Shown here in pieces: positions 1 through 46,567 of a DNA stretch of 64,000 nt (position 1 is its first letter; each line of letters starts with the position of its first letter). This DNA comes from Paragordius varius. Its lineage: Eukaryota; Animalia; Nematomorpha. Below the pieces are notes generated by a model. That model did not search any database. It was not told where the DNA came from and saw only the letters and a list, made by a program, of their open reading frames with translations. The translations under genes were made by a program, and so were the position numbers. The stretch lies in the NCBI GenBank assembly GCA_964247055.1, contig OZ176055.1, positions 4,650,001 to 4,714,000 of the forward strand, given 5' to 3'.

Positions 1-57
1 ACGCCAAATTGCCAAATAGGTTTATATAATTCATGTATAATGATAATGTATTTAAAA

Positions 58-257
58 CAGAGCTTCGAACCTATCTCGAGGAGATTTTAGGAAGAACCGG
101 CTTAGTTGGGTCGGAACCAACCCGGTCCCGGTTTTATTTCTTAGGGAGCCACCCGGCTCCGGATATAATATTTTAGGACCCACTTCGGTTTTATTTTTAA
201 ATTATTAGGAACCAAGCCGGTTGCGGTTCAAATTTTTCGACGCGGTTCGAAGCCCTG
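58..257. mobile_element. hAT-type MITE (~200 bp)
   Basis: TIRs cagagcttcgaacc (58-71) and ggttcgaagccctg (244-257) match 13/14. The 8-bp flanks atttaaaa / atttcaaa match 7/8 with central TA on the left copy. Interior is rich in aaccgg/ccggtt. Confidence 0.7.
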
Positions 258-370
258 ATTTCAAAAATCCATTTTTTTATTAATCTAGTTTTTCATTGCA
301 TTCTAAGATAATTTAAAAATAATTAATTTTACTTTTTGTAATAATATATAAACCTATTTAATTGATAAAG

Positions 371-3300
371 TACCAAACTTTTTACATATAGCGATAAAGG
401 CGTTTTTTCGGTTGTAATCCTGGTAAATCTCTTAAATTTCCAATTTTATTATTAAGGAACGACATTGAAGAAAAAACTGTGATAGCTTATGCCGAAGCGC
501 GATTAAACCCGGCAAAATTCCCAAAGAATTTCGATTTCTTGGAGTATTTTGGGTCCCTTTCTGCCGCACGACTATCCAATGCCCAAAATTCACATATGTC
601 ATCAAGTCTTAACACAATCATAAATTACAATCAACATTCAACGCTTAATAGTTGTTATACACTGAGTAGTAATTACAATACATCATTGAATCCTTACTCA
701 GGTTCTTCTTCAGATTTTGGTGGCGCTTTAAGTGGTGGAGGGTCCGTACCCTATTTGGTTGAGGACGAAAGCTATTTGTTCGAAGAGATGGACTTCCGTT
801 TGGTAGGAATGGTTGCACTCAGAACCTTGGCTCAACAAGACAAAAAATCTACGCGATCTTTAATCAACAGATTCAAAAATGCCGGAATTAAAGTATAATA
901 TTTTTAAATAATATAATTTGAGATAGTTCAGTCAAACTCTTTTTTGTGGATTATTTTGATAAATTCCCCCTTTTTGTGTAAAATATTTTTTATCCCATTT
1001 GTTGTGCTTATATAATAATTTAAATTCGGTTAAACATATTTATTATTTAACATAATTTGAATTCTTTTATTGAATTTATTGTTTTGACCAATAAATGTTA
1101 AAAACAATTGAACAAATCTAGCAATTTCTGGGTGTATGATGTTAAAAGTTCTGATAATATTTTAAAGGCACATAACCTTTTGTGACGGTTTTTGAAAATT
1201 ATTTTTATACACCCCTATCCTAGACAATAATAAAAATTATTTTTTATTACATAGAATATATTGCACAGTCAAGTTTTTTTACAAGAAGGGTTTTACTGTT
1301 GCATATATTAAAAAATAATAAGAAATTATGTAGAATTTTTGGGATCCATTTATGAGATATTGAAATTTTAGGTAATGATTTTAAGCAAAGAGGGCGCAGA
1401 AACAACCAAACAAATGGCAAAAAATTATGGAATATTTGATGAGAATAGCGAAACTTTGGATGATGTGGCCGAAAAATTGAATCTTACTCTAGACAGATTG
1501 GATCCCACGTAAAATCCAATACAATTTAACATTGATTTAAATTCAAAAAAGTCTTTTTCGCGTTAAGTTATTTGAATCTAATGTGATATATATAAAAAAT
1601 TATAATTGTTAACATTAGTCAAGCAACATGTCATATCATTGACTGTGAAATGTTAAAGGATATGTCGTTTGCCGAAATCGACAATACACTTTCAACGCTT
1701 TTATACAACCATTTCAGCAACAACAGTGCAGTAAATACAACTCTAAATACGGTGACGGATTCTTCATGGGGAAAGGGGATGGGTTCGCAAATATCGACAA
1801 CTATATCCGGTAAATTTGATATATTTTATATTAAATTGCTAAAAATACAAGAAAATTTAAAATTCTACAGACAAACCTATTTTTTTCAAAAGACAATCAA
1901 TCGTACTTCTTAAACTTTTTTCCTATATAAATCAGTTAATTCCAATCGTAAAACATATAATTGATTGTGTTACTAGTTTTTAATCTCTATTTCATACTTT
2001 GTTTAACACAATGATTTATATTTTAATAAAATCACTTTTAAAAAGTGCAACGGTCTTTTGTAAAAAAAATTATCCTTATGTTTTCACGTTTTGTCCGCAT
2101 TATCTTAGTTTTTACTATATAAAACAATTTGCGTATATGTATACATTAGTTAACCCCAATCACCAACAACAAATGTACACTAATTATGCAGATAGCCAGA
2201 GTATGACTTCTAGTCGTTTAGGCCTTGTTAATACAGCCAGTATGCACAGTTTAACCTCGGGTAGTCATCCGCATAGCCATTCCCAACATACTTTAACTAA
2301 TTTTCAGGTAGCTTTTTGTTGCAACAAAAGTCTCACGTCTGACCCATCCAAAATATCCGCACTAACGTTCAGTCATCACAAATTACGGCTTATAGAAGCA
2401 TTTCAAAGACTTGGCGATGTCATAGCTGTCATAGGATCAACTACACCTGATTGCGTTGCACTCAAACGATGTGATATAGGTTTTTAGCAGTATTATATAT
2501 TTATATGGGATATATAATGTAATATAACTTAAATACCTAGTATATATGTTTTTTTTTCACTTTATAGGAATAGGTCTTGAACAAGGGAATCAGATCTCTC
2601 ACAAATCCGCTGATCTCATACTCATGCAAGATTCTCTTCAAGATATATTGATTTTGGTCGAAGAAGGTTGGTTTTCATTAAAAAACATTTTCGTAAATAA
2701 TTTTGCTAAAAAAATGTAATCATTTATATGTATTAAATAAATTAGGTCGCGTTTTTTACGACAATTTGAAAAAAGCATTAATCTACATTCTCTCAAGCAA
2801 ATTAGCCCAAATTTTACCAATCATCATTTATTTTACATGCAATATACCAATGCCATTAAGCATCACAACCGTATTTTGTGTGGAAATATGTGTGAACCTG
2901 GTATAAATTTTTTGATAAATATAAGTTAATGCTTAGTCAATTCTTCGCCTTAAATATTTGAGATAAAATTATCTCTAAAATTATTCGTTTAGATTCCATC
3001 GATTGGTCTTTTTAATGAACAGGCAGAAGGAAATGTGATGAAAAGAAGGCCTAGAGATATTTATTCGGAAAAACTGGCTTGTCTACGGTAAATCTTTGAG
3101 ACTATAAAATTTTTTAATTTTATTAATTAAATTGGGGCAGAGAACCTCTAAATATGAGTGAATCAATATTAACCATCACTAATAAACATACAAAGTCCCT
3201 ATCTCTCTTAACTTAGAAAACCTTAATTTTGCAAAAATAGCTTACTCTGACCTATAAGTCGTATTATATCGCCCACCATTTTTGTGTTGAATAAATATTT

Positions 3301-6300
3301 GTTTTTGATTAAATCAAAAAATATATTGCTAAATTTTATTTTAATAAAGATGGTATGTGGGGATCTGGAACAATTCATAACTATACTGATTTACATTTTA
3401 ACGTGTAACGTAATGTTTATATGGGTTGGATAAGGTTTTGATTGCATAATGCCTATTTAGGGTTATACATTATCATAGGAGACTACAATTTGGCAATACA
3501 TTATACGGGATCCTTAATGTCTTTATGACATTTTATATTTATTTAAATATCCAAAATTCTACTTTTATAATCAGATCTACAATGCAGCTTTTACACTTCA
3601 ATTTAAATTGGGTTAATACCTCAGAATATATTTAAGTTGATATTTTTAAAAAACTGAAAGAAACGGTCCCAATAAATTTATATCATCCTAATAAAAACTA
3701 GATAAATAAATATCTAAATAAAATTTATTTTTAGAAAAAAAGTTCCATATCAAACTGCTTCGACGCCATTTTATTTTATAACATTTTCGCTGATTATCGT
3801 GTTTAATTTTAAAGCTAATATTAAAGTTATTTTGTATTTAAGTCACACTAACATTCGAACAGAAAAAGTGGTTTATTTTATATTATTTTTTAATTAATGC
3901 AAACTGTCATATTGACTAAATTCTTACCTTTGTTTACCTTAAAATAAATAAAATCAAGTATTTTTGAAAGAATAATTTATATTTTGGTTCATTAATATAT
4001 AAATGCAAACTTTTTCCATCTTTTTAATTCCTTCAATATGTTTTGAAGTATTGAATTTTAAACAGGCCTGGGGTATTCAAATACCCCATTTTGAATCAAA
4101 GGACTGAAAATAATGCGTTGTATATAAGCAATAAGCATTTTAAACCTCAATTAACACAAATTAGTATAACACATCCGTTTGTTTGAAAATTAGAGCTCAT
4201 AATTTAAGGATATCTACGCCTATTAAATCTATATCTTCAATTATTCATATATTTATTATTAAAGTTTTTTAATTATGCATTAGATTATTTAAAAGGGCCT
4301 TTCTTTTCAACGGACCCATACAACTATTAGCCTGTCTGACCGTATACGTTGTTATAATGGCCGAAAATGGATTTTGGCCTCGCACCTTGTTGGAAAAGCG
4401 TGTTTATTGGAATTCTGAATTCATAAATGATATTACGGATTCCTATGGACAAGATTGGGTAGAGAACATATTTTAAATTAAGTTTTTAGTATTTACATGG
4501 GCTGTTTTGCTGTGTTGGAAAGTTTTTATTTGAAAAACAAAACAGAATTTGTTACCCGTACCATTAGCACATTTGAAATCGGAACCGCGGTTCTGAGAGT
4601 TTTAAAAGAGAATATTGAATGTTTTCCCTTTTTTTCAAATATTCAACACAGTGTAAATAAACATCTGTAAATGCCAATACACCAATAAAATATTTAAAAT
4701 AAAATTTTATGCCTTTAACCAATTCTGTTGTTTTTGATATCCCAAAATATATTGAATCCGAAAATATGATACAAAATGAAGTCGGTATTCCTTGCTTTTT
4801 AGATTTTTGGTTTAAATTTGCTTTTACCAAATTTGAGTCTAATCATTCATTTCCAATTATAATTTAAAATAAGTAAATATTATATTTTACCAGAAAAAGA
4901 CTGTTTTAATCTTTAGATATAACGTATAATAGCGAACAATATTTGTTTAATTTTTTTGATATATTATGATTAAAACCATTCAAAGTTCGTTGCTTTGGTG
5001 CATTAAAATTTCGGAAGTTGCAGAGGTTTAAGCATTGTTTTGTCTTTATAGCATATAATATATATTTAAATTTTAGCTTCATATTTTCTATATTATAGTC
5101 GTTTAATCAATGCATTATTAATATTACATACAGCTGCCTAATTAAGGTAGGTATGAACATTTAAAATTTTAAACGGCACGACCAAAACGCTAAGTATATT
5201 TTATTTACGACATTTTATTTTGTCCGACAGAGTTATTACGATCGAAAAAGGCTTGAATTTGCGTGTCACAGTGGATTTCTCTGGACCCTTTTTATGCTGC
5301 AAGCTGTCAACGCCATAATGTGTACCAAAAAAGTTCATTCCCTATTCGCCAAAAAATCAAAATTCGAGTAAACCTTTTTATTTTAATTAAAATTTTTCCT
5401 ATATTAATTATAATGTTTGTTTGTTCTCCTTTCAGAAATTGGCCATTAGTGTGGTGCCTTTTCCTATGCATGATTATAATATTGTTTGTAATTTATGTGC
5501 CTGGACTCAATTTCCTTCTCAAACTACAGCCTATTAAGTAATATTTGTTGAATATTAAATTTTTACTTATTTTCACAATGTGTACTTTATACTATTATAC
5601 GAAATATATCTAGACTTTGTTAAAAAACCTTTACGATGTTTTGTTATTAAAAAAACAATAAGGTTTTAAAATGATTTGAACATCAAAAACCGTGGCCAGG
5701 TTAAAATAGGGGTGTCCAACATGCGAGCCGCATTCGGCTCTCCTTAGTTTCGACCCGCGAAAAGTTCGAAACATTACCAAATAAAATCGAAATTTCATAA
5801 GCAAAATATTATCCTGGTAAATATTTCACCAAATTTTCTACTTAGGTTTTTCCAAATTTTGGCAATGAAGTAGCAAAAAATGTTGAAGTAAATAGTGGTT
5901 AAATTATATTCGTAATAACAATCTTATGTTAATTCATAAAAATATTTTTAAACCATATATTTTACGGAGCCGCCCACCGGGTTTTTAGAGTCAAAAATGC
6001 GGCCCTTGAAGACGTTTGTCTTGAGACACCTGGTTTAAAATATCATTGGGTAATAGGAAAAATGAAAAGTATATGAAAAAACGACTTAATTCCATAAATG
6101 GATAATTATTTTTATTTAAAATAATACCTCCATTTAATCTATCGAAACATTCCAAGTTAAATAAAATTAGTGTAAATTTATAATAATATAATATGTTTTA
6201 ACCGAAATTTTTAAATTCTACAGATTTTGGTGGCTGTTTCCTGGGATTCCATATGCATTAATTCTATTCTTGTTTGATGAATCTCGTAAATTTATTATTC

Positions 6301-6344
6301 GCCGTGATGGTGAGAGCACTATGGCGCTTGAAACCCTATATTAA
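371..6344 (+). CDS. Divergent Na+/K+-ATPase alpha-like (P2C) paralog, 5' part outside the window; probably catalytically inactive
   Basis: Hand-spliced exons: ~371-413, 457-892, 1372-1508, 1619-1809, 2150-2479, 2568-~2667, ~2747-2901, ~2992-3088, 4284-4458, 5231-5367, 5436-5537, 6224-6344. They align colinearly with the neighbouring pump (NAGIK|V, GRVFYDNLKK, MKRRPRD, NDITDSYGQDW, C-terminal ETLY*). No stop or frameshift in the spliced frame. The start of the first visible exon is uncertain. Confidence 0.85.
5707..6032. mobile_element. hAT (Buster-like) MITE in the last intron of the divergent ATPase
   Basis: Left end taggggtgtccaac, right end gagacacctg. Flanks ggttaaaa / gtttaaaa (7/8). 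Internal sequence resembles the 57647-57945 copy (atgcgg, aaattttggcaatgaa.tagcaaaaaatgt). Confidence 0.75.
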
Positions 6345-9300
6345 TATCTATCATTGTTCCTTATATAATTTTTATCAAATGTGATTTTCTTTATCTTAAT
6401 ATTGTATTTATTTATGCATTTTATAATAAATTGTGAATTATGTAATTTATCAAACTATTGTATCCAACAAGTAAAAATGTTGCTTAATTGGTTAGTTTTG
6501 AAAACATAATTTACAACATCTGGCTGTTTAAAGTAAAACTTTTAAATTTTACGTTAAATATGGACTCAATGTGAAAATGTTATTGTCCAATACTGAATAA
6601 ACCATGTTCAGGCACTAGCCTTTAAAGTAGATATTTAAAAATAAAAAAATTTGCCAAGTTAGAACCGGTTGTTTGAGTTTAAAGTTTTATGCAGTTATGC
6701 AATAGAGCTCTTTTGTTAAAAAAGGAAGATATATAAACTGTAAATAATAAGTTGATTTATAAATTTTTCGCTCTTTTTTTACCTCTTTCTTGAAAATAAT
6801 ATAAAAATGCAACCTCGGATAATCTAACAGCTCAAAATTGGTCTTTTAGGCGTTAATAAATATTTCCAACTCTCATATATTTGTGTAAATTTATAGTTAT
6901 ATCATTTATTTGACACAAACAATTTTCTAATAATTATATTTCATACAATGTTGCAAATAAAAAAATAGCCTTAGGTCATTAATTTTGTTTTTTGCAACAT
7001 ATATTTCAAGGGCATATTTTTATAATATTTATATGTACATAAAGAATAGATGATATTTATGCATATAAGGACGACCAGTGATTATTTCACACTTATGTAG
7101 CATATATTATATTATTGTTTGGTGACGGCTATTAATTTTCAATTTTTTCCGAAATCTTCAACTTTATTTACCATTTTCAAAAAAACCAATTATCAATACT
7201 TATAATTATTTTCTGAATCCCAATTTATTAAACCTTTAAAAAATTAGATGGTAGATATTGGCAAGGTATACGTTGTTTCTGAAATTTATACTTTAAACGG
7301 TAAAGTATTAATAGGTAGTTTAAAACGGAAATAGGTCGCACATAATTTTTATTTATTTCGTTTCGTCGTCACATAGATTTTTACGTATTTTTCCATATTC
7401 ATTCACATTACAAAACCACAGTATGATAAAATTATTTTTGGCATTTTTTTTCATTATACGGTAACGAACAAATCAAATGTTTATCATAAATAGAGAGACA
7501 ACGAAAATAGTGGGGTATAGCTTTGTCACCAAATAATGACATATCAAGAAGATGTATTTTCTTTTATTTTCGCATTCATATTTTTTTATATAAACCTCCA
7601 CAACGTTTTAGTATTTTTATAATTATATTTTTTGCTTAAAGCTAAATATTGTCTATTTTTATTATTAAATTCATTTATGTGTAAGTTATCATTACTATTC
7701 TTAAATAACTTTCACATGGTTTAAGGGATATGCGATAGGTCGTATATTAATTTGAAAAATAAGACGACCCACAAGGTTTTTTTTATAATTTTTTCGCAAT
7801 ATTATTTCTATAATATCCCTCAAAAAATGATCTTATCTCTTCCTAAAGACAAGTTATAATTAACCTATTTGTACACCAATTATTCATATACCAAAATTGA
7901 AATTCTCCATATATTCTAAATTCCATTTTTGCTGAGGATTTGTTATAATTCTTGCCTAAAATCATGGATCGTTTGGTAACATCATTTTAAATCATACATG
8001 TTTAGATAATTGTTTTAGCAAATAATTATAAAAACCATATTTGTTGTACATGCCTTACAATAAGCGGCCGCAGAAGGTCATAAAGTAACACTTTCTAGCA
8101 TAATAAGATCATTTTAGTTTTTTACATTGAAGGTTTATTTTTTAAATTGACGGTTTTCCAACATTAATTTTGAATTACTAAAGATTAGTTTTAATTTCTT
8201 ATATGTATTACAATAATTGCCCACAACGATATATGGACATCCTGTGTTGTGGTCAAAAATCGATTTATCTCAAACGGCCTATTGAGTATAATGCGATTAA
8301 TTTCTACAACTTATGCAATTAAAATTTTAGCATTACTCAGCATACCCATGTTTATTGATTAAATATCATGATATGGGTAAAATATCACACTGGATTAGAT
8401 CTAAACGCTAGTTTTAATAATTATAAAAGATGATAATTTATATAGTTTATTTTTAAAGATGTTAGTAGAATAAATAAATCAATTTAATAATCAATATTTG
8501 GCTGAAAAGCGCACATTTATCATTACTAATTATTGAATTTGTAGGGTAATGATATATGTACTAATAACAATTATTATTGTTAACAATGCCAAGGTTAACA
8601 AATAAACAAATTATGTAATTTTTTAAACAAATTGTAATTCCGTATTTTGAAAACTAAAACTCATTTAATTATTATTCTATGTGTGGTTAATAATTTGTGT
8701 TATGCAACATCTAAAAAATATAATTTTTGCTGATTACTAGAAGCAGCAAAAATGATCCGACGGGCAAGGCGAGTGTTTTGATAGAAATAAGGACTGTCTT
8801 TATCAGAATTAAGATAAAATATCTGACATTATAGTTAATAGGGAATCGGATATAATTCACCAGAGAATCATTGTATAGGATCATTGTCATTAATCATTAT
8901 CAAAGCTATTCTAGCCATTTAGCAAAGACCATCTACCATAGTGTATGAAAATGACTTCCATTTTATGCATGACATATCCAATAGGTGCCATTGTTTTTTA
9001 AATATCCAACTTTCTTGAGTTTAAAATTTAAAAAACGCATAGTTATGCAAAATATCACAGAATTTCAATTCCTTTCCAATCTAATATCATTAAAATAATG
9101 TTGAATCTAAGAGTCATGGCTAAATAATTACATGAGCGGTTTTAGATATTGGTTTGTTATTTTATTAAATATAATTCAGTTTTTTTATCGTCTGCTATGT
9201 CCACCTGTTTCAAAAGAATATTATGTTCTATATTTTAATCTGTTTGCCGTCGTTATTTAAATTTGAAAAAATAGGTTTTTATTTTATAAAACAAATTTGA

Positions 9301-9950: not shown

Positions 9951-17042
<7,092 letters not shown>

Positions 17043-17515
17043 CGGATAATAATATTTTTGTATTAAAATTGTGAACGCATTCTCAATTAAAATCCTGCCT
17101 CTGTAATATTTTTTATGAAACAATTGGCCCTATGCAATATTTAAATTGTTTTATTATTATCTGTATACCGAAAATTAAATAGTTACAAGTATACAATTAA
17201 TAAAAAACCAAATCAAAAAACAATGAGTTAAATTGGTGTACGTATATAGATAGGAACAAAAATATTAGATGTATGTCTTATTTTGTATAAATTAAACTAT
17301 ACTCATACTTATTTGAATCATCTCATTTATAATCCTGCACGTTATAAACATATAAAAATCTCGAAAAATGACTCAAATGCATGCGATGAACTCTAAAAAA
17401 ATGAATTTATATAACTTACACCATTTAAACCTATATGTATGCTAACAAACCCATTTCAAATAAATGAATATAAGATTACGTCTGAAAATTTGAGTTTTTA
17501 AAAAATAGCTTAGAT

Positions 17516-25929: not shown

Positions 25930-28900
25930 TATTTTTAAACCTACGGTTGTTTTACAAAAATTAACCTGTCACCGTTTGGTACTAAAATGGATTCAGGATT
26001 GTTTTTAAAACCTATACAAGAATGGCTAATTAGCCCGTTTCTTTAAAATGGTTTCGGTTTTAATCCCTTTATATTTATGCATTCTTTTATGATGTTTCCC
26101 TTAATGTTTCAGATTACCAAATCTTGGGCATTCTTGGCCCTTCACATTAGACGCCTTCCAAAAGCATGCCATTGTCCACATCTCTCGCGGGAACAGTGTT
26201 TTAGTTGCAGCGCACACTTCTGCGGGGAAAACGGTCGTGGCTGAATACGCTATCGCTCTTGCAAAACGAAACAAAACTCGGTTTGTAAAAATTTAATGAA
26301 TGATTATTTTGTTCGCTAGAAACAATTGATTAAATAAAGAATTAATGATAAAAACTTAAGAGATGTTGTATAGCCAAAAAGTGTATTCATCAGGTAAAAC
26401 TTTTAATGAAAACTTTTTCCACAATAAAATCACCGCATTACATTAAGTAATAATATATATATAAAATAAAAATGGTTAACAAATTACAACCTGTTTTATG
26501 CTTAATTTTACATTTAGAGTATAACAAGAACTAAAATTATTTTTATAGCTCAGAAAGATATGTCGATTGTTTCATATATCGCCAAAACCCAAAAAAGATG
26601 ATATTTGTCGGCGCCAAGCTTATTTTTATTTGTTACAAAAATAATTTAAACACGATTTCTGATTGTAGCCTTTTACTATCATAATATTTCCTATCTTAAA
26701 CTCTTACGATTCAAGTAGTTTGATGATTTACTTAAATATATGACGCTAATTGTTTTGTTTAGTGTTGTTTACACATCACCCATAAAAGCTTTAAGCAATC
26801 AAAAATATCGGGATTTCAAGCAAAGATTTGGCGATGATATCGGTCTTATCACAGGTGACATTTATCTCAAAGCGAATGCATTTTGCCTTATTATGACGAC
26901 AGAAATTCTCAAAGTTATGTTATATACTCATGACGATCTCATTTCCGAACTTGAATGGGTCATTTTTGATGAGGTATACGTTTAATAGATAACCAAAAAT
27001 TCTATTTTATAAAATCGACTGCATAAAATTTATTTTAAAATAATGCTTTCAATATTTGTGTGAATCTTCAATACTTAACTCGATTCCTTTTATTTATATA
27101 TTCTATTAAACGGTACCATTTTTATTATATATTGTATTTTTCGCTTATTCGAATTCGACAATTGGCTAAAATACAATGACACTATATTTTATTAGGTTAG
27201 ATGTTATAAATCATATATGCCTGATTTTTTTTATTAATTTACATGAAATTAAAGAATGTTGCATTTTTTCTGTCTTTGCAAAGGTTCATTACATAAACGA
27301 TGAAGAAAGGGGTGTTGTATGGGAAGAGGTCTGTATTCTCCTGCCATCTCATGTCAAAATGATTTTTTTGAGCGCTACTGCCCCAAACGCATTAGAGTTT
27401 GCCGATTGGATAGGTTTTATACCGTTTAATTTCTTCAAATTATAAGGCTAAACGTAAAAATATTTTTTAAAAAGGACAGCCATACTTTTTTAAAGTTGAT
27501 TTTCTCTACAGTTAGGGTTTCAAAGGAATTGAAATATAAATAAATAACACTTTAATTATACATTCCACTTTTGTAAACATAGTTTTCATAGATTAAATAA
27601 GGTTCAAAAAAGTATAGATGTCTAAAAACAATGTTTTCATCATAGTCCCTCTACGTTTTAGACTATGTAATTTCTTAATGAATCTTTCATCTTTTCTAAA
27701 TATTAGGGTCCATTAAAAACAGACAAATTTACGTTATTTACACAACAAAACGTCCAGTTCCACTCGAACATTTTCTTTACATATCCAATTTGCCTGATCA
27801 AAAGCCCAAATTGATAGCGAAATTGCCAAAGAAAAGTATGCTGATATACCATTTACAATTTAATTTCACCCTTAAACAATTCAAATTCACCCTCAAATAA
27901 ATAATATGTTTTTTAAGATTATAAATTACCTATATTTTATATATTTTTTAAAAATAAAAATTTTGTTTTAAATTAAAATAATACTGAAAAAATAATAAAT
28001 TATACCATAAACATATATTTCATATTAATAATGAGTTATATAGTTTGAAAACACATAATTTATTTTTAGGGTGAATTTAAATTGTTCGAGGGTGAATTTG
28101 AATTGTTCAGGGGTGAATTTGAACTGTAAATGGTATATTCCAATTTTATATTTCAAATAACTTAATACTATTATATTGATGGTCTTTATAACAATGACTT
28201 CTTTTGAGTTACTGCCGGAAATATGATGTCGACATTAATATAATAACCAAATTTTCATATGTACTTAAAAAATTATATATTTGTTTTTTAGCAAACACTC
28301 ATTTATACCATTTTTGTTAGTTTTATATATTTTAACTATAAAATCAATCATATAGAAAAAGGTGGATTAAACCATGTGAACAATCACTTTAGTAAGGAAA
28401 TCGCCTTGAAAGAAGCAAATCATAACGAAAATAATTCTAGTACAGGCGATATAGCAGTCTCAGGTCGAACTTTTCTTTTAGTTGATTCCAACAATCAATT
28501 TTTAGGCGAAAATTATCGGGACGCCAAAACTAAATTGCAGGTTTTTTTACAATATTTAATTGTTAATGTTTAAAAAATTGTATAACAATTAATTTTAAAT
28601 TAATTATGCCATATGCAGTTTGTGTATTTTTTATATATAAAAATATAAAACATTGTGTTCCATTTTTAAAAACCTTGCATGATCAAATGAATATATTACT
28701 TGAAATTAAAGCCTTTTTTTAAAAATGTATTAAACATTTCAAAACTGATGACAATAAACTTTGATTTATGTCTGTCATTTTAAAAAGATGAATTTTATTT
28801 CTTTTAGGTAAGATAGGACATTACAAATTGGCATTTTAATTGTTAATGCTTCTGATAAATTCTGTTATTTTAGCATTAAAGATTTGATTTTTATAAATAA

Positions 28901-31900
28901 ACAGCTTATAATTGCTGATTCTTCTATAGATATGCTAATTATTCTAAGGTTTTTACAAGACTATTCAACATGTTTGATATTTTTTAATTAAATATTTAGT
29001 TATATACCAAATGAAGATGTTTGATTAAAGCTTTTAGTAACTGATACCAGATTAAGAACAAAATTAATTCCCTATGTAGTTTTAATAACAAAATAAAATA
29101 AATACAGTTGTTTTACCACACATATCTCCTTTAAATATAACAGTTAGATATGATATTCTGTTTACAATGTTACAACCAAATTGCGTGTTTAATCTAATTA
29201 AAATTGACTCATCTTTTATGATTTATACATTTAACATTTATTGTTTACATAAATATATCAGAATTATAATTAATGTTTTAAAAATTGTATTGTTTTTAGG
29301 AAACATTTGAAAAAATTAACAAAGCCACTCTCATCAGATATGATAAATCTGCAGCACAGAATCAACCCTCATCACAAAAAAATAATCCACAAGATCAGTT
29401 CAAAAAACATTCGAATTCTAAACCGGCTGGAAATATAGCTCCCAAAGGAGGCGGAAAACATGGACCTAAGTTCTCTATTTTTTAAATTAATGATATAACA
29501 AAATGCCTACAATTTTTGGGTGCCGACCCATTTTTTATCTCTTTTGTGTAAAGTAATTTTTTGTGTTTTTTCATACACCTTTACGCACATAAGTAGCTTA
29601 AAATTTTAGTTTTTTATTCGACATCACCCCACATGGAAACTAACAATAAACCTGGTTGTCCTCGTTTAACTTGGGCTAAAGAGATTGATAAACTGCTAAA
29701 AACAGATTGTATTGATAAAGAATTTTTTCATAAGAAGCTGGATAGTTTACAATGGATAGATAGATAGATGGCTGGTGTCAAGGGGCCCCTTTGCATCCCG
29801 TCGTGACGGGGTTTAGGTGTTTGATCATTGCATTGAAGGAATTTTTGTTTAACCAGTCCCCGGCTTTTATGTTTTTTGGCCTGTAGGTATTGGGTAATGT
29901 TTTTGTCCCATGTTATTGCTGGACGAACAACTCTGTTTTGTTTGTTTGGCTCAATTTGTTATATTTTTTATCCAATTGATGGAGTACCATCAAAACTTAT
30001 TGTTAAACAACAATATCAACATAGGATAAATATAAATATGCCAGATACATCTTGCTAACAAGCCATTTTTATATTTTTTTTTCCTAATTATGCTAACCAA
30101 CGAAAGCATGAGATATATAAACCTTCATATTTTTATTATTTTTGTAATCCCCTGTTTTTGAAAAAGAGAGTTTGTATATATTTTTAATTATGTCCCGATA
30201 AAATATAATTATTTAGGCAAATTACACTAACTCCATCATCTCAAAGTTCTAGTCCTTCCTTGGCACCCTTGCGCGATAAACGGGTTTGGATAGATTTCAT
30301 TAAACATTGTCAAACATGGAATAAACTGCCTGCCGTCGTATTTATTTTCAGTAGAAAACGCATTGAACACATTGTACAAATGTTGTTGGAGAATTCGGCT
30401 GCTGACAACCTTAATCTCACCACCAAGGGAGAAAAGGCAAAAATTGAAGTTTTTTGTCGGAAATGCATTTCAAAACTTAACCCATTAGATCAGGAACTTC
30501 CACAGGTACTTTTCAATTGTTTAATTTGGTTAACATATAAATTTCTCCTTGGAAAAGGGTAAACGTGTCTCATGTAAATTATTCTTTTTTTTCTCTGTAA
30601 AACTTTTTAAACACCCATTTTCAGGGTATTGAGAATTGTGAGCTAAAATATATGCATGTAATAGTTTATCATACTAAACGAGTAGTGATTATTCCGTTTA
30701 GCACTGATTTTAATATAAAGAAACATTTTAATTTGAAAACCTACAGCGTTTTTATGATGTACAAATTTTTTTTAATTCCGTAGGTGATTTACATAACTCG
30801 CTTGTTACGGACTGGTATAGGAGTGCATCATAGCGGAATCTTACCCATCCTGAAGGAAATGGTGGAGTTTTTGTTTCACAATTCGTGTGTTAAAGTTCTC
30901 TTTGCAACAGAAACGTTTGCTATGGGACTCAATATGCCAGCGAGAACGGCGGCCTTTGAGCTACTTCGCAAATTCGATGGCACCGGTTTTCGAAATTTAG
31001 CGCCCGCCGAATACATTCAAATGGCGGGTCGTGCTGGTCGAAGGGGTATGGATACCACGGGCGCAGTTTATCTCCTATTTAAGGTTTTCTTTTTTTTTGC
31101 AACAAGAAATCGGTTTGATATTTTCACAAAAAATATGATTTTTTATTGATAGTTGAATAAGTTTATCATGACTTTCGAGCACATAGTGTATAAAGTTTAC
31201 GGATTTTTTTACAAATTGTTCTTGTAAATAATTTTCTAGTGATTTATATATTTTTCAGAACATTCAAAACTGGCTTCTGCTGTAAGTTCACTATGGAAAT
31301 ATGTGATAGTAGGACATTGTTGGGCATAATATGTTATTATCTTTTATAAAAACATTAGGATTGTATTATGGATGAAATCGATTTAAAGATGATTATGTTG
31401 GGTAAACCGGCTAAACTTGAATCCAAATTTTACCTAAACTATGGTATGATACTTCATTTACTCCAAAATGCAAACATTAAAGCCGAGGATATGTTGCGCC
31501 GAAGTTTTGCTGAATTTTATCATCAGGCGAATACTGGTATATTAATATATGTATACTTTATAAATATATTAATAATATGAAACGCTTATAAATTAACCTC
31601 AAGATTTTATAGAGTATTTGGGTGGAGTGGTATTGATATAAAATTAGTTTGGCCCCGCCAAAATTTTTGAATTTGTTTTACGGTCACAAAATTATTTAAT
31701 AGAATAATAATCCATCGATATTTTTCTGTTTCGATTTTATAGAAAAGTGGTTTAAGAATAAATAATAAGAAATATTTTCTTTCTATAATACCAATTACTT
31801 TAAATTTAAGATATGACTTTATATGTTTTTATTCTATCTTTAGGCCTTATATATTCAGAACGAAAGTCCTATATCCCTATCTTATTTGTAAAACATTGAG

Positions 31901-34900
31901 CTTTTATACATCTAAATTTACTTTTATCCATCCAGATTTATAATTTGATCGCATGTGCGATCTGGTTTTGATGGCCAGCAGAAAAACCAAAATAATTTTT
32001 GATTATTTTTATTAAAACTCAGTTTTATTACAAATAACTTAATCTAATTTTTAATTTTTTGTATCCATAATAATAGTTAAGACAAGGTATTATGCATTTA
32101 TTTTTGTGTATGCTATCCACTAGTTTGACAAATAAACTAAAGTAATATTTAGATCGTTTTTAAGAGTCCAATGAGTTTGCAAAAGATTGTCTTTCCAATA
32201 ACAAATTTTAAAGTCATGTTGCAAATTTAATTATTTGATTGCAGGCTTTAGACTGGAAGAATTGAAAAATGTGATGGAACGCATACAAGAACCCGAACCT
32301 TTCTTATGCAAACTTTGTTCAACTGATATTGATTTGTTTTACAAGACTTTTTGCGATTTCTATAATCTACAGCATAGTTTTATGGTACTTTGTCGTTTAG
32401 ATATGATGATATATTGATTGTATCAATTATATTTACTTTATATTTTATTACAGAACAAATTATTTTGCTATAAACGCCTATTTGAAATACTATGCATTGG
32501 TCGCGTTATCATATTTAAACTAATGCATTCAGATCTGCTAAATATGGATATGATAAACTCTAAAAATCCGAAACAAACTGAAAAAGCTCTTTCCCCCTTA
32601 TTGGCCAGTAATGATTAGTTTTGAATAATGCGAAACCAAGCTTTATTTTGATTCTTTTTTCTTGCAAAACGAAAATTATTTTTTATATATCCACCCAAAT
32701 TTTTAGAAGATTCTGAGTCAAAACAAAAGTCAAATAGTGCATATACATTATGTTTGGGTTTAATTCTCAAAACTAACCGGCATTTGAGTGTTCCCCATCT
32801 AAAGGTTATCTATATAAAACCTAAGAATATGTGCCAAAGAAATTTGGATCTCAATGCGTTCCTTAATGAGGGAACTTTAAATGTTGGACATCTCATAGGC
32901 CAGGGTTTATCTACTGGCACCGCAACAAACGATGCATTTAAAGATTTAATAGCCAGTCTAAATGATTATCTCACCATATTGGTTCAAACTGATCAATTTA
33001 TAAGGAGCAATTTTTTACCTCACATTCCACCAAACTCTATGAATGCCAAAATAAATAATGGTTAATATTATATATAGTTTGTCAATCTCAAAAACCAAAT
33101 TTATTAATAAAACTGGATTAATAAATGCAATTAAAAATTAATTGACGACGACCGGTTTTGTGAAACCGGAACCAATACCGAATCTCAATTTATAATCGAG
33201 TACTATGTATACAGCATTAACCCTGTTACATGGTTTTCCTCATTACTTCACATACTGGGTTGTTTTTATAAAAATAAATCAATGATTGATAATTTAAATG
33301 GTAATATTTTTAAGTGTTTTCTAGTTTTTTAAACATTTGTATTATAAATTTTAATTTGTGATAATGATTATATCTCTAAAATTCATTTATATATATTTTA
33401 AGCTCAGTTAATTGGAAACATTCATATTTATAATTTATATTTTATAGAATATCACGATAGGATTGGCATTTTAGAAATCAAAAACTTCCAAAACATAATC
33501 TACATTACTCATCTTAACTGCCAATTGTACAGTGATTCCATTTTACACCAATACAGAAATATAAAGACACGCTCATCATTAGCTTCTTTATCGATGGCGG
33601 GAAAATTCAATACTAATAATAACAATCCGACCTGCCTAACAAACCAAAATCAAACTGATCTCAATAGTGATTTTAACGCCTTTTTTCACTTTGTACCACC
33701 CATTCTTGAACGAATTAAATGTAAGTTTAAATATTTGACATTTTAGATTTTATTTTTATTTAAATATCATTTAAAGCCGATGTATTTTTTTTATCAAACC
33801 TTATAGTTTAAATTTAAAATTTTTATGTTATTATTAAAAAGATGATATCGCTTCCACAACATTAAATCAAGATACTAATTCCCTGTTCATATATGGGAGT
33901 GACAAAGCTATGGGCTTTAGAATTAAATCCAAAGCGCCACATAACTTTGGTTTGAATAGCAGATTGGATGAGATTCGAACATCCATATTATCTCCAACAG
34001 GTCGTTCATGTTTAATTTCAAATTTAACATTATATCTGTAGTTTTTGTAATTATTTCTAGGGTGTGATCTTACTGCTTAGGAAAGCAACCAGATAACATT
34101 TTTAAAGATAGGGCGTTATAGAAATTATTATAAAATAATGGTATACAATATATAAATAATTATATTCAATTTTAACAATTCATCCAATTTTAGTTAATTG
34201 TTATTAAAATTATTATGAATATATTTAAAACTCATTTTTTTTCTTCAATTTCGTTTTATTTTAATTAGTTGTAACGTATATTTCCGTAATCAATTATATG
34301 TTGGCCGATCTAAAGAGCATTATATTTCATCATAGATGTGAAATCTACATGTAGTACAGGAAATTCTGAAACTAAAATCATAAAAGTTGCCTCACATCAA
34401 TGGGAAATAGATTTGGAACTTGAAGAAATGCTCAAAACACTCAGCGCAAAAATTAGATTGGCTCGAGATTTTAGGTGTGTTAAATCGTGTCCGGCTTTGG
34501 TAATTATATTACAAATTTTGTTTATTATTTGTTGTTGTTGTTGTTGTTTGCTAAAGTCGATTCCGACTAATTGCAACATTGAAAAAATGGCTTCTCCATT
34601 CATTGCGATTTCCGGTTTTGGTGTTTAGGTCGGATAAGGATAGGTTGGTTTCTTTAAGGATGTTATCCATCCAACGAGTTCGTCTTCTCCCTCTTTTTCG
34701 GGCACCACTCACTTTCCCCAGCATCAGTGATTTTTCAAGTGAGCTGGATCTCATGATGTGCCCGAAGAAGGAGAGTTTTTGCCGTGTTAAGCTGCCAAGA
34801 AGTGACATTTCTGGGTTTATTTTATTTAGAATGGTGGTGTTTGAAACTTTGTCTGTCCATTTTGTTTGAAGAAGTTTTCTCCAAACCCATAATTCGAAAG

Positions 34901-37900
34901 AATTTATTAGACGTTCATCATATTTTTTCAGTGTCCAGCTTTCCCCCCCATACATGAATGTGGGGAAAACTGTAGCTTTGATTAATCTGATTTTGGTTTG
35001 TAGTTTAATGTCATGTGACATCCAAATCCTGTTATATTTAAAAGTTACTGCTTTAGCAATAGCAATTCTTCGCTTTATTTCAGGCGTAGAGTTGTTCTCA
35101 TTATTAATAATGCTACCTAAGTACGTGTAGCTGCTAACTGTTTCGATCTGGTTGCCGTTGAGGATTATTGGATTGGTTTGAGCCGGATTTATTTGCATGA
35201 CTTTTGTTTTTTTGAAATTGATATTTAATCCAAATTTATTGCATTCAGTTGTAAACACTTGCAAAGCTTGCGATAATGTGTCTAGACTGTCTGCGAATAA
35301 GACTGTATCATCCGCGTAGTGAACGGATGTAAGTAGGTTCCCACCTACGTTGATGCCGTAAGTTTGTGGGATATTTCTTATAATGCACTCCAGGTATGCG
35401 TTAAAAAGAATTGGTGATAAAACGCATCCTTGACGGAGGCCGACTTGTACCCTACATGGGTCAGATATACCGTATGGTGTGGATACTATAGCCGTGGAAT
35501 TTGAATAAATTGAAAATATGATTTTGATTAAATGTGTTGATACTCCGAGTTGTTTTAGAGCTTTCCGTAGTTTATTGTGCTGGGAATCAAATGCTTTGGA
35601 AAAATCGACAAAGCACATATGCAATTCTTTGTTAAATTCGATGTGTTTCTCGATTATCCACCTCATGTTACATATCATATCTCGGCATCCTCTACCTTTT
35701 CGAAAACCAGCCTGAATCGTGGATATTTCCGGGTCAAGAATGGAATTTAGACGAAATTGTATTATTTTTAGAAAAACTTTGGACACCTGGTTTATGAGCG
35801 CTATGGTGCGATAGTTGTCACACAGTTCTGGGTTACCCTTTTTTAAAATCGGAATCATAATGGATGTACACCAATCCTCAGGAATTTTTTCCATCTTAAA
35901 TATGATTTGAAAAAGTTTGGTGAGTATATCGATTGGAATGTATTTTATTATTTTAGTAGGGATGTCTTTGTGGCCCTCTGATTTACCGGTGCTAGAGTGT
36001 TTTATGGCGAGTTCCACTTCTTCTTTCATAATAGGTGGTTCTTTTTGTTTAGTAAGTTCGTTAATAGTTGGGGGGTTATTTACATTGTATAGTTTGTTTA
36101 TATGTTTGTGCCATAGTTTGCGAATTTCGTCTTTTTCAGTGACGATTGAGTTGTTGTCGTTTCTCATAGGTCCCTTATAAAAAACTTTTTTGTGTGGAAT
36201 AATATTGTTTGCATGGGCAAAGAGGTTTTGGTTATTTTTGGCGTCTGTTTCTAATTTTTCACATAGTTGGTCATAATACTTATTTGTGTCCTCTCTTGCA
36301 CTCTTCTGAAATTCACTGTTTAGTTGTTTGTATTTATCCCATTTGCATTTGGTTTTTGAGTCTCTACACTTTTCTGCGATCTCTAGACTTTTGGCTGACA
36401 ATTTCATTTTATTTTTATTGCGTTTGAGAGGCCGAATGAATTCGTCGGCTGTGTCTCGGCAGATTGTATATATATCGTTCCAAAAGAAGTTTATATCCAG
36501 ATAGTTTTCGGAATTATGATCAAGACAATCGAAACGATTTGATAAAGCGGTGCTAAACTTGTCGTCGATTGTATCATAATCTAATCTTGTTCTTGTGGGT
36601 TTGGATGTTTTAGGAAGTTGTAATTTAATTCGGAGTTTGGCGATCAATAGGTTGTGGTCGCTGTAGCAATCCGATCCTGGTAGGCATTTGACATTTTGAA
36701 ATGAACTTTTGTATTTTACCATACCTAATATGAAGTCAATCTGGTTACGGTATCTTTGACACGGGGAACGCCATGTGTATAGACGTCGTTTGGGCTGTTT
36801 AAAAAAGCTGTTTGCGACGAAGAAACGATGGTTAGCACAAAATTCAATCAATCTGTCTCCTCTCTCGTTTTTTAAGCCCAAGCCCATGCCGCCCGTCATA
36901 GGAGGTGTTTTGTCTGTTCCGATGATTGAATTAAAATCGCCTAAGATAAATATATCCTTTTTTGAAATTTGGGAAATCGCCAAGTCGAGATCGCTATAAA
37001 ATTTTTCACAGTCGTCATCGCTGTAAGAGGAGGTAGGTGCGTAAATTTGAAGGATAGTAATGGGTTGAGGGGTTGTATGCATGCACAAGTTAATTAAATT
37101 GTAATTTTATTATTGAGAGATTTTTATCAGCTAATTTTATAATACCCATATTTAAATAATTACTGTTGTAAGGACCGATACATCTTCCTTTTTTGTCTTT
37201 TAAGATTTCTTTAAGAGTTATAAGCCGTGGAAGCATTGTGTCTGTAAATCAGTTATTAAATTTATCCATCATTTAAAACATTGTTGCATCTGTTATTTGG
37301 ATTATAATTATTAGAAAACGGGTAATCTATTTAAGCAAATGTTCCTTTACAATTTAGACTACAACACATTTTGCAAATTTTGTGGCCGGTATGGACTATC
37401 AAACGAAAAAGAGCAAATTGGCAGAATTAGCGAAATCTCTTATGATTAAAACAACCATTATAGGCAATAGTACTTCGAACGAAGGTGGGAGTCTTTTGGA
37501 AAAAGCTGGTGGAAATATATCGATTGCAGATAATTATGAAGATATGCAGTTTCTCCCTGAATATCAACAACGAATCAAAGTATTTACATTTTTAGATTCA
37601 CATTTAATTTTGACAACTTTACGTATGAGATATATTTACAATTATATATTTATATTCATTAATAAACATTATTATACATCAACACGCCAATATTATGCAA
37701 ATTTATACCATATAAATAATATATATTTTTTGTGAATATTTACTAACTAATTAAATGGTTTGACACGCAATATTTATAGATTTTATATTTTTTAATTTTT
37801 ACTAAATTCACGCATGTAAATAACCAGACAAATAAAATTTACTTACACCGATTATCCCCATGTGAATTTTTTTATATTTACGTTTTATGCAGAGGGTAAA

Positions 37901-46300: not shown

Positions 46301-46567
46301 CCCGATAACTGTTACCAAGCATAAAATTCCAACTAGGAGCCAGATTACGATTTCTTGCCACAATAGAAAAGGCTTGTGGCCTATGGTAGCATTAATGGTA
46401 GTGGGCAAACCAAGGGTCGTAGCACCCATCAATAGCGAGCTATTGAAAATTAATTTAGAATTATGTGAATTATTATTGTTCATTGATGAGGATAAAGGAT
46501 GTGTGAGATCCAGTGAAGTAAAATTTATAATATATTTTTTGGTTGATGCTAGCAAATTATTCGACAT
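43361..46567 (-). CDS. mAChR-B: Muscarinic acetylcholine receptor, B-type, intronless CDS, 1068 aa
   Basis: GN in TM1, SLAASDL in TM2, LCDLWLTTDYTACLVSQYTVLLITIDRFCSV (D3.32, DRF), CWTPYH in TM6, YWLCYLNSPLNPFMY in TM7. The third intracellular loop is roughly 720 aa. Which Met is the start is uncertain. Confidence 0.9.
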   Translation of the reverse strand: MSNNLLASTKKYIINFTSLDLTHPLSSSMNNNNSHNSKLIFNSSLLMGATTLGLPTTINATIGHKPFLLWQEIVIWLLVGILCLVTVIGNIMVILAFLREPSIRQPNNYCIVSLAASDLLIGLFSMPFYTLYLLLDFWPLGPLLCDLWLTTDYTACLVSQYTVLLITIDRFCSVRIPAKYRIWRTKAKLKFLICFVWILSFGIFFTSIVGWPLITGKRTRGLHECYVPFRNNKIFNTALIFAYFWVSLVILLILYYGIYRVAYTMAKKSDNRKLKSTLLKGNQIIFTTAKTAFPIHGMSGATDKKRSSDEERRYEKQTEKLTRLLGKPEDIDTDDHKDDFDNDDDDTEIGHKPSLPKKVVHRSFLEPISESHPLNKPTSSNKLTSVLKNVAQSSIGINKNGKTRDNNLPNLTGLKSVHAKHIRFKSLAPIINSKKSNNKFGKTKLETPSREDPRDLNDNQKNHESMNEFIDCTSQNKVVEGKTSNIMTDSPLNIANEVEINKENDKNIFKNLETPGHKSFISTQRLTNTNSFFGDKITHERNLQISNPQTSSISQIPNSGIKNSSTDRKIINQVGQPLIPREKKRRALPNPHLLRKFSHKLLHETNKKNYRIPKTSSFGMDFPYPYDDDMLNNVLQDKKHTEANTLRNERSIAHSCGLNPLNIEFKPFSYFPYAYEPPYGNDQMHEEIDRDELIDLQKNNLSNNAFNPNIRNSFDFNTQPKATTGYHLNREILKNASNCQSLLIVPNDTLLDKNTTLTNNIHDQNSKRGDHPKEVVTQYSNQSEDKPISSENNEYMTEKEKTKDNLITDKSTWIRTSSKKLLPALPDVKSLSKNFKPTRSVKIKISNKKIKHNYQEISYDEDLADEIADAQDEGKSESINETDLLNDQLSESTNEKTNFCNTENNDSLNAKEKSSDVPDPSKSQQKGSTIKHSTSTSSSSSKLGSLKLGSSAISSIWPGGGLKSNMYTAAKTKALISAAKKRKKNTKAKKALRTITCIMGAFVLCWTPYHILETIWGFCDSCYINPHFYAFTYWLCYLNSPLNPFMYALANVHFKQAFIKLLNCRNYS

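What the first reader, a model, noticed from the sequence alone, without database searches (positions are those of the whole stretch)
457..2479. Tandem Na+/K+-ATPase paralog with intact ORF but erased catalytic motifs (candidate pseudo-pump)
Seen: against the canonical pump next door, DPPR is replaced (GMVALRTLAQQD), MVTGDH becomes ILSKEG, and TGDGVNDSP becomes IGSTTPDCV. All visible exons still splice in frame without stops. Established: in P-type ATPases the TGD and GDGVND motifs are needed for nucleotide and Mg2+ coordination and for phosphorylation. Inference: a pump-dead subunit maintained for a scaffold, signalling or regulatory role, for example competing for beta subunits. A pump-independent role has, as I recall, been reported for the C. 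elegans P-type ATPase CATP-1. The DKTGT and TGES motifs lie upstream of the window and cannot be checked here.
Basis: partly seen in the sequence, partly recalled or inferred. Interest (0 to 1): 0.82.

Follow-up and report, generated by a model that had tools for sequence, protein, structure and literature searches.

The report
Conserved pump-dead sodium pump paralog
A hairworm genome carries, next to a normal sodium-pump gene, an intact copy that has lost every residue needed to burn ATP; a second hairworm genus has kept it too, so it is a working pump-dead protein, not a dying gene.

Summary
The window holds only the 3' half of a roughly 23-exon gene (G000:C6:4641859-4656344). I recovered the upstream exons. 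TGES, PEGL and DKTGT are erased too, as are KGAPE, DPPR, TGD and GDGVND; only the phosphorylated Asp, K691 and D714 equivalents remain.

It is not a pseudogene. There are 0 in-frame stops in 1,325 codons, against 7.5% stop codons in its own introns (P about 1e-45), and every junction has a GT-AG solution. A collinear ortholog exists in Gordionus sp. m (XP_065322983.1, 48-53% identity), in the same tandem position upstream of a canonical pump. Synonymous sites between the two species are saturated (pS 0.79) while pN is 0.30.

Catalysis was lost before the two genera split. The cation-site residues are still present in Gordionus but were neutralised later in the window species. The segment best kept relative to canonical pumps is the extracellular SYGQ loop that binds the beta subunit.

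My reading: a selected pseudo-pump, probably a beta-bound membrane scaffold or regulator. Expression is unproven because no usable RNA data were found. The scan noted parts of this same gene twice more (s1-305296, s1-261524). I ran no search with a joined spliced model.

The parts
1..19 (+). Tail of exon 11 (exon starts at L009:9784, i.e. 217 bases before the window). This exon holds RGHPL in place of KGAPE (L009:9877-9891). Upstream exons, all outside the window in L009 (= G000:C6:4640001-4650000): first coding exon 1859-1885, then 5609-5833, 5920-5979, 6075-6314, about 6680-6796, 6992-7129, 7438-7555, 8057-8331, 8402-8741, 8872-8989, 9173-9287.
457..892 (+). Exon 12: end of the N domain (EKTVIAY in place of GERVLGF), a roughly 70-residue Ser/Asn-rich insert, ALRT in place of DPPR (815-826), and NAGIK retained.
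1372..1508 (+). Exon 13: P domain, ILSKEG in place of MVTGDH (1378-1395).
1619..1809 (+). Exon 14: P-domain segment followed by a low-complexity insert that canonical pumps lack and the Gordionus ortholog has.
2150..2479 (+). Exon 15 (acceptor somewhere between 2149 and 2236, unresolved). K691 equivalent kept (SHHKL, 2371-2385). IGSTTPD in place of TGDGVND (2431-2451), with the D714 equivalent kept.
2568..2666 (+). Exon 16: end of the P domain.
2746..2900 (+). Exon 17: TM5-TM6. SSKLAQ in place of TSNIPE (N776 to K, E779 to Q). CVEICVN in place of CIDLGTD (D804 to E, D808 to N).
2993..3087 (+). Exon 18: L6/7 loop, MKRRPRD retained.
4284..4458 (+). Exon 19: TM7 and the extracellular L7/8 loop, with the beta-assembly motif DSYGQDW (4438-4458) retained.
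5231..5367 (+). Exon 20: TM8. Q923 equivalent kept, D926 to N (in both species).
5436..5537 (+). Exon 21: TM9. E954 equivalent replaced by Cys (kept as Glu in Gordionus).
6224..6344 (+). Last exon: TM10 and the C-terminus ending ETLY (canonical ETYY), stop TAA at 6342-6344.
10045..17084 (+). Tandem neighbour: alpha-subunit paralog with all canonical motifs, 77% identical to Gordionus P0160. Context, not part of the pseudo-pump.

Best explanation

It keeps the ten-helix membrane body, folded-looking cytoplasmic domains and the extracellular SYGQ loop. It has lost the residues that bind ATP, transfer phosphate to and from the catalytic Asp, and hold Mg2+. In the window species it has also lost the residues that hold Na+/K+.

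Shown here: it is intact, conserved and constrained, and its motifs were erased before the two hairworm genera split.

Inferred: it still pairs with a beta subunit to reach the membrane. There it acts structurally, as a junctional, adhesion or scaffolding partner like the pump-independent role of the fly alpha/Nrv2 pair in septate junctions, and not as a transporter. My odds are about 0.9 for 'selected and pump-dead' and about 0.4 for the beta-bound scaffold mechanism specifically.
For: - Complete collinear gene of about 23 exons, every junction with a GT-AG solution.
- 0 in-frame stops in 1,325 codons, against 7.2% off-frame and 7.5% in its introns. Exon GC is 0.38 against 0.25 in introns.
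- Its only close relative, found with one 98-residue exon as query among 1.84 billion representative proteins, is Gordionus XP_065322983.1.
- That ortholog is collinear at 48-53% identity, against 30-40% to the window gene's own neighbour. It sits in the same tandem position about 3.7 kb upstream of a canonical pump, with a SKI2-like helicase nearby.
- Even the 9-codon first exon is conserved.
- pN is 0.30 against a saturated pS of 0.79.
- Motif table: TGES, DKTGT, GDASE, FNSTNK, KGAPE (partly kept, KGNPL, in Gordionus), DPPR, TGD and GDGVND are replaced in both species.
- Of 191 universally invariant positions changed in both species, 96 carry the same derived residue.
- In an unbiased sliding-window scan, the SYGQ/L7-8 loop and the TM7 end are the best kept (13/15 and 11/15). 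DKTGT and DPPR are the worst (0-2 of 15).
- SYGQ is reported as the alpha/beta assembly motif (PMC9609216).
- Fly septate junctions need ATPalpha and Nrv2 but not ATPase activity (PMC8006247).
- The four other alpha paralogs in this genome keep the catalytic motifs; the 8.77 Mb copy has small variants (TGEA, HNIPE, IDLGID).
Against: - No transcript evidence. The one run guessed to be RNA gave no contig on the gene, only two short contigs that look like a canonical paralog.
- Beta binding and membrane location are not tested. The only beta gene found is split by very short introns, so I could not set up a complex prediction.
- dN/dS cannot be given as a number because dS is saturated.
- Only two species are available.
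- The Gordionus copy keeps an intact set of site I/II cation ligands. This may mean ion binding still matters there and that the conserved role is not purely structural.
Confidence: 0.75

Rival explanations
1. Regulatory decoy. The protein's job is to titrate beta subunits or other pump partners away from the active alpha subunits, for example the one encoded next door. This would tune pump abundance without building a structure of its own. It is the first reader's example.
For: The SYGQ loop and TM7 are retained. The gene is in tandem with an active paralog in both species. Only one beta-subunit gene was detectable for five alpha-like genes.
Against: A simple sink would need only TM7-TM10 and the L7/8 loop. 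Yet the A, N and P domains are as constrained between the two species (51-63% identity) as the membrane part (44-55%). No expression data exist to show co-expression.
Confidence: 0.15
2. ATP-independent ion-handling protein. The membrane domain still binds cations and works as a sensor, leak or gated pathway, with the dead headpiece acting as a regulator.
For: Gordionus keeps the equivalents of E327, S775, N776, E779, D804 and D808. The membrane domain and C-terminus are among the better-kept parts.
Against: In the window species these ligands are F, K, Q, E and N, and the E954 equivalent is Cys, yet the gene stays intact. Cation binding is therefore dispensable for whatever keeps the gene. 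D926 is Asn in both species.
Confidence: 0.07
3. An ordinary decaying pseudogene, or a gene-model artefact that only happens to stay open.
For: No RNA evidence. Most exons fail to hit Pfam on their own. The branch is extremely long.
Against: P of about 1e-45 for an open frame of this length at the intron stop density. An intact collinear ortholog exists in a species with saturated synonymous divergence. Exon GC is raised. The micro first exon is conserved.
Confidence: 0.02

Closest known systems
Canonical Na,K-ATPase alpha subunit (P2C P-type ATPase; e.g. pig alpha1 in PDB 3wgu/7d91, Drosophila Atpalpha)
   Same: Collinear homology over the whole length. Ten TM segments and the same A/N/P domain order. 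Shared intron positions with the neighbour. SYGQ loop, MKRRPRD loop and a C-terminal E-T-x-Y. Equivalents of D369, K691 and D714 kept.
   Different: TGES, KTGT, GDASE, F475/K480, KGAPE, R544, DPPR, TGD, D710 and N713 are all replaced. It keeps only 43-50% of the 457 positions invariant from echinoderms to nematodes. There are inserts in the TM4-P linker and in the N and P domains. Its tree branch is about 75 times the median.
Gordionus sp. m RMFG-2023 XP_065322983.1 / CAK9303686.1 ('sodium/potassium-transporting ATPase subunit alpha-like')
   Same: Ortholog: collinear at 48-53% identity, the same erased catalytic motifs, the same inserts, the same N- and C-termini, and the same tandem position.
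   Different: It keeps PE of PEGL, SN..E of TM5 and IDLGTD of TM6, which the window species has replaced. 56 invariant positions changed only in the window species against 19 only in Gordionus. The public record gives only an automatic name. I found no paper describing the motif loss.
C. elegans CATP-1 (alpha-like P-type ATPase with reported pump-independent function)
   Same: A divergent ecdysozoan alpha-like paralog for which a role independent of pumping has been proposed (PMC11631496, citing Ruaud and Bessereau 2007).
   Different: CATP-1 keeps the D-K-S/T-G-T site (D409), and its pump activity matters in at least one context (PMC11631496). Divergent C. elegans alpha-like sequences (Ce2C3-5; their match to CATP-1 was not checked here) are reported to lack SYGQ (PMC9609216). 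The hairworm protein is the reverse: SYGQ kept, catalytic motifs gone. Orthology was not testable because I had no CATP sequence in hand.
Pump-independent role of Drosophila ATPalpha/Nrv2 in septate junctions
   Same: It shows that an alpha/beta pair can serve a structural junction role without ATPase activity (PMC8006247, citing Paul et al. 2007).
   Different: In flies the same active gene does both jobs. Here a separate gene appears to have given up catalysis altogether. No junction evidence exists for hairworms.
Artemia alpha2KK and H,K-ATPase (lysine in the TM5 cation site; PDB 8k1l appears among the hits)
   Same: The window species has Lys at the N776 position. From memory, a TM5 lysine occupies or neutralises a cation site in those pumps.
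   Different: Those are active pumps with altered stoichiometry. Here every catalytic motif is gone. The equivalence of the lysine position with alpha2KK was recalled, not tested.

Membership tests
Catalytically competent P-type ATPase | DKTGT phosphorylation motif | tested here: not met
   LIDEHSL at L009:8600-8620 aligns to CSDKTGT of alpha1/alpha3 chains. The Asp369 equivalent is kept and KTGT is replaced. Gordionus has DDSSL.
Catalytically competent P-type ATPase | TGES dephosphorylation loop of the A domain | tested here: not met
   TGAH at L009:7456-7467. FGRH in Gordionus.
Catalytically competent P-type ATPase | P-domain motifs DPPR, TGD and GDGVND (Mg2+ and phosphate coordination) | tested here: not met
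   ALRT, SKE and GSTTPD in the window species. KCHV, SQN and GRNTPD in Gordionus. Only the D714 and K691 equivalents remain.
Catalytically competent P-type ATPase | N-domain ATP-binding residues (GDASE, F475, K480, KGAPE K501, R544) | tested here: not met
   In the window species there is no aligned GDASE, CKT-KQ stands for FNSTNK, RGHPL for KGAPE, and EKTVIAY for GERVLGF. They are likewise replaced in Gordionus, except that KG of KGAPE survives as KGNPL.
Na,K/H,K-ATPase alpha subfamily (P2C), by descent | Whole-length collinear homology to P2C alpha subunits, with best matches in that subfamily | tested here: met
   Exon-by-exon matches to the neighbour. PDB hits are Na,K- and H,K-ATPase alpha chains. 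Pfam E1-E2_ATPase hits two exons. The ortholog carries PF00122, PF13246 and PF00689, and its best relatives are Na,K-ATPase alphas.
Na,K/H,K-ATPase alpha subfamily (P2C), by descent | SYGQ alpha/beta assembly motif in the L7/8 loop | tested here: met
   DSYGQDW at window 4438-4458. DSYGQEW in Gordionus. It is the best-kept window of the protein. The role of the motif is taken from PMC9609216.
Na,K/H,K-ATPase alpha subfamily (P2C), by function | Cation ligands E327, S775, N776, E779, D804, D808, D926 | tested here: not met
   Window species: F, S, K, Q, E, N, N. Gordionus keeps all but D926 (N).
Pseudogene | Stops, frameshifts or lost splice sites, and neutral divergence | tested here: not met
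   0 stops in 1,325 codons (P about 1e-45). GT-AG at every junction. pN 0.30 against saturated pS 0.79 with an intact ortholog.
Pseudoenzyme (dead homolog of an enzyme kept by selection) | Homology to an enzyme family, catalytic residues missing, and evidence of purifying selection | tested here: met
   The rows above, plus conservation across two genera. Expression and protein product are not shown.
Nematode CATP-1-like divergent alpha subunits | Orthology with CATP-1..4; DK(S/T)GT kept; SYGQ absent | tested here: inconclusive
   The motif pattern is the opposite (PMC11631496, PMC9609216). The tree leaves the clade unresolved among protostome pumps, and a hairworm-only clade is not rejected (AU p 0.117). 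No CATP sequence was available to include.

The most novel reading that the evidence does not exclude
Hairworms keep a dedicated, naturally pump-dead Na,K-ATPase alpha subunit that still assembles with beta. This would make it the first P2C P-type ATPase shown to be maintained purely for a non-transport role. Its two orthologs capture an ordered decay: first the ATP and phosphoryl-transfer machinery (shared by both), then the cation sites (window species only, with a lysine placed in the former site).
Probability: 0.5. Interest if true: 0.72.

Novelty: new variant of a known kind. Interest (0 to 1): 0.6.

Why it matters
Pump-independent roles of the sodium pump (junctions, adhesion, signalling) are hard to separate from ion transport, because the same protein does both. 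A natural alpha subunit kept under selection after losing ATP binding, phosphorylation and, in one lineage, ion binding would separate the two.

Its conserved surfaces should mark what the non-pump role needs. These are the SYGQ loop, TM7, the A-domain core, and new shared residues in the dead P domain such as TPDCVALKRCDIG.

It would also add P-type ATPases to the enzyme families with documented pseudoenzyme members. And it flags that automatic naming as 'sodium/potassium-transporting ATPase subunit alpha-like' hides the loss of function.

Tried and rejected
- **RNA evidence.** One search for runs and one laying of four runs. The single run guessed to be RNA did not cover the gene. The DNA runs gave near-identical fragments and repeat pile-ups, too few exonic variants for pN/pS.
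- **Word search with the longest exon.** Nothing found, as expected from its length filter.
- **Pfam on single exons.** Only two of ten exons hit.
- **Numeric dN/dS.** Impossible because pS is at or above 0.75.
- **Sister group of the clade.** The tree is unresolved. Shared derived states with the neighbour are 1 of 20, no better than with other paralogs. The AU test does not reject a hairworm-only clade. So 'tandem duplicate of the neighbour' rests on position alone.
- **ESM Atlas look-alikes.** Only generic P-type ATPase clusters.
- **Literature.** No paper found on motif-dead P-type ATPases or on this gene. Drosophila CG3701 and C. elegans catp-4 are called 'divergent' (PMC3793950), but I could not obtain their sequences to check their motifs.
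- **Complex prediction with a beta subunit.** Not sent. The only beta gene found is split by very short introns, so no contiguous, unaltered piece holds the TM helix.
- **Structure prediction.** Not run. A model built on canonical homologs would only restate the homology.
- **Joined spliced model.** Exons were used one by one, and the Gordionus protein P0001 stood in for full-length work. The window gene is therefore absent from the tree.
Full report
**What is there.** The window is G000:C6:4650001-4714000 of a 110.6-Mb, 44-contig, AT-rich assembly. The finding lies in the 3' half of a gene that starts outside the window, so I fetched the 20 kb upstream (L009, L010). A translated comparison with the canonical gene next door (window 10045-17084) gives a collinear series of matches from L009:6195 to window 6386, covering every part of a Na,K-ATPase alpha subunit.

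HMMER alignments to solved alpha chains put them on DPPR, TGD and TGDGVND.

**Gene model.**
- Every exon pair has at least one GT-AG intron that keeps the frame. Most are unique solutions with good consensus, such as aag|GTAAAA and tttag|.
- Exon 2 opens at a strong acceptor, with no ATG upstream in frame.
- A nine-codon first exon, MPIKHPNNP followed by GTAAAT, lies at L009:1859-1885. It matches the annotated first exon of the Gordionus ortholog, MKHPNNP followed by GTAAGT.
- The gene therefore spans C6:4641859-4656344, with about 23 coding exons and about 1,325 codons, ending in TAA at window 6342-6344.
- Only the acceptor of the exon ending at 2479 is ambiguous (2149-2236).

All are gone as well. 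Pig alpha1 numbering is read off the PDB alignment coordinates.

| Canonical motif | Window species | Gordionus ortholog |
|---|---|---|
| TGES | TGAH | FGRH |
| PEGL | LPFT | PESF |
| CSDKTGT | LIDEHSL (Asp369 equivalent kept) | LIDDSSL |
| GDASE | no aligned counterpart | ESPAD |
| FNSTNK (F475, K480) | CKT-KQ | TKNPKQ |
| KGAPE | RGHPL | KGNPL |
| GERVLGF (R544) | EKTVIAY | GKHVIAY |
| TGD | SKE | SQN |
| TGDGVND | IGSTTPD | TGRNTPD |

The K691 and D714 equivalents survive.

In the membrane, the window species has E327 to F, N776 to K, E779 to Q, D804 to E, D808 to N, D926 to N and E954 to C. This agrees with the scan's separate note s1-261524.

With this set of losses, established P-type ATPase chemistry leaves no route to ATP binding, aspartyl-phosphate formation or its hydrolysis. 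'Pump-dead' is a strong inference from sequence, not a measurement.

**Not a pseudogene.**
- In-frame stops: 0 of 1,325 codons. The other two frames of the same exons hold 7.2% stops and the gene's introns 7.5%. That gives about 1e-45 for an open frame by chance.
- Exon GC is 0.38 against 0.25 in introns.
- The decisive evidence is an ortholog. One exhaustive HMMER search, with the longest well-aligned exon as query against 1.84 billion representative proteins, returned one outstanding hit. P0001 has 51% identity and E 1e-19. Among the rest, full-length canonical pumps match at about 26-40%.
- P0001 is XP_065322983.1 / CAK9303686.1 of Gordionus sp. m RMFG-2023, a freshwater hairworm. Its name is automatic: 'sodium/potassium-transporting ATPase subunit alpha-like'.
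- It aligns to every exon of the window gene in order, at 48.5% identity. It aligns to the window's canonical neighbour at only 30%.
- Its locus has the same layout. The dead copy is followed about 3.65 kb downstream, on the same strand, by a gene with the full Pfam set including Hydrolase. A SKI2-like helicase lies nearby, as in the window.
- Over 1,135 ungapped codon pairs, pS is 0.79 (saturated) and pN is 0.30. Neutral sites have been randomised while the protein has been held.
- For scale, the tandem neighbours of the two species are 72-74% identical. The window's 9.06-Mb copy is 88% identical to Gordionus P0160. So since the split the dead copy has evolved roughly twice as fast as its neighbour, not without limit.

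**History.**
- On a tree of 24 alpha subunits, P0001 sits on a branch of length 10, against a median of 0.13. Its place among protostome pumps is unresolved.
- A clade of P0001 with the Gordionus canonical pumps costs 1.8 log-likelihood units and is not rejected (AU p 0.117).
- Derived states shared with the neighbour are no commoner than with other paralogs.
- The duplication therefore predates the split of the two genera. It may be hairworm-specific, and its source copy cannot be named beyond the suggestive tandem position.
- Of 457 columns invariant in 17 canonical pumps from echinoderms to nematodes, Gordionus keeps 50% and the window species 43%.
- 191 of those columns changed in both species, 96 of them to the same residue. 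56 changed only in the window species and 19 only in Gordionus.
- The order of events is therefore as follows. A burst on the common stem removed catalysis. Constraint followed. The window lineage then additionally lost the cation ligands that Gordionus still has: PE of PEGL, SN..E of TM5 and IDLGTD of TM6.

**What is kept.**
- A sliding 15-residue comparison with the canonical consensus ranks the extracellular L7/8 segment beginning SYGQ first (13/15 and 11/15). The end of TM7 comes next (12/15 and 10/15).
- After those come A-domain core strands, the MKRRPRD loop and the TM10 start.
- The worst windows among normally invariant stretches are DKTGT (1/15 and 1/15), DPPR (2/15 and 0/15), the TM4-P linker and PEGL.
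- SYGQ is reported as the alpha/beta assembly motif (PMC9609216).
- Between the two orthologs, the dead N and P domains are as conserved (51-63%) as the membrane helices (44-55%). They share new residues and inserts, so the headpiece is still under selection for something.

**Mechanism proposed.** The protein folds like an alpha subunit, pairs with a beta subunit through L7/8 and TM7, and reaches a membrane. There it serves as a structural or scaffolding component, with the cytoplasmic headpiece as an interaction surface.

The precedent is the fly septate junction, which needs ATPalpha and Nrv2 but not ATPase activity (PMC8006247). This step is inference.

The lysine at the N776 position in the window species may fill the abandoned cation site. 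From memory, a TM5 lysine does this in H,K-ATPase and Artemia alpha2KK. I did not test that.

Rivals are a beta-titrating decoy, an ATP-independent ion-binding role (argued for by the Gordionus ligands, against by their loss here) and a pseudogene (excluded).

**Context in the genome.** Five alpha-like loci lie on contig C6. The four others keep the catalytic motifs; the 8.77-Mb copy has small variants (TGEA, HNIPE, IDLGID). The 9.06-Mb copy is closest to Gordionus canonical pump P0160, at 88% identity. One beta-subunit gene was detectable.

**Organism.** An earlier scan note called this a hairworm-like animal (s1-261288). The Gordionus ortholog, the synteny and the 88% identical housekeeping pump agree with that. 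The species name is not given to me.

**Comparison with the known.** By descent this is a P2C alpha subunit. By function it fails every catalytic membership test. Divergent nematode alpha-like sequences are reported to lack SYGQ (PMC9609216). The hairworm protein shows the opposite pattern and is not shown to be their ortholog. I found no paper describing a motif-dead P-type ATPase alpha subunit or this gene. Drosophila CG3701 is called divergent (PMC3793950), but I could not check its motifs.

**Limits.**
- There is no RNA evidence. The only run guessed to be RNA did not cover the gene, and its two short contigs there look like a canonical paralog.
- Only two species are available.
- Beta binding is untested.

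Noticed in passing
G000:C6:3497119-3508127, 8772176-8778194 and 9060127-9076891 (all minus strand); window 10045-17084: Including the pseudo-pump, there are five alpha-subunit-like loci, all on one contig. The 9.06-Mb copy is closest (88% identical) to Gordionus canonical pump P0160, so it is probably the housekeeping pump. The 8.77-Mb copy is the most diverged active-looking one and reads TGEA, HNIPE and IDLGID.
   Followed up: partly
G000:C1:10543010-10548121 (L017-L020): This is the only detectable Na,K-ATPase beta-subunit gene. Its transmembrane helix appears to be interrupted by very short introns, in line with the micro-introns noted elsewhere in this genome.
   Followed up: partly
window 80-270: A dispersed repeat lies in the intron between exons 11 and 12. 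At least ten further copies occur on other contigs, at 73-85% identity.
   Followed up: no
window 3620-4220: A high-copy repeat lies inside the 1.2-kb intron. Contig depth runs into the hundreds to thousands in three DNA runs, with many variant copies and internal joints.
   Followed up: no
window 34551-37088 (minus strand): An 845-residue open frame looks by eye like the endonuclease plus reverse-transcriptase ORF of a non-LTR retrotransposon. It sits within the SKI2-like helicase region.
   Followed up: no
window 43361-46567 (minus strand): A single uninterrupted 1,068-residue ORF has a seven-helix receptor-like pattern and a very long third loop. An intron-free gene of that length is unusual in this intron-rich genome.
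   Followed up: no
window 59067-59567 and 61861-62361: Two near-identical 166-residue ORFs lie 2.8 kb apart, a recent tandem duplication of unknown function.
   Followed up: no
L009:5609-5640; P0001 residues 8-20: The N-terminal motif RADSYRVA of the pseudo-pump is shared with Drosophila Atpalpha but not with the Gordionus canonical pump P0160. The dead copy has kept an apparently ancestral N-terminus.
   Followed up: no
L011:1-2789 and 28456-34801: In Gordionus the dead copy, the canonical neighbour and a SKI2-like helicase lie together, as in the window, though the helicase is on the other side and strand. The neighbourhood is conserved with rearrangement.
   Followed up: partly
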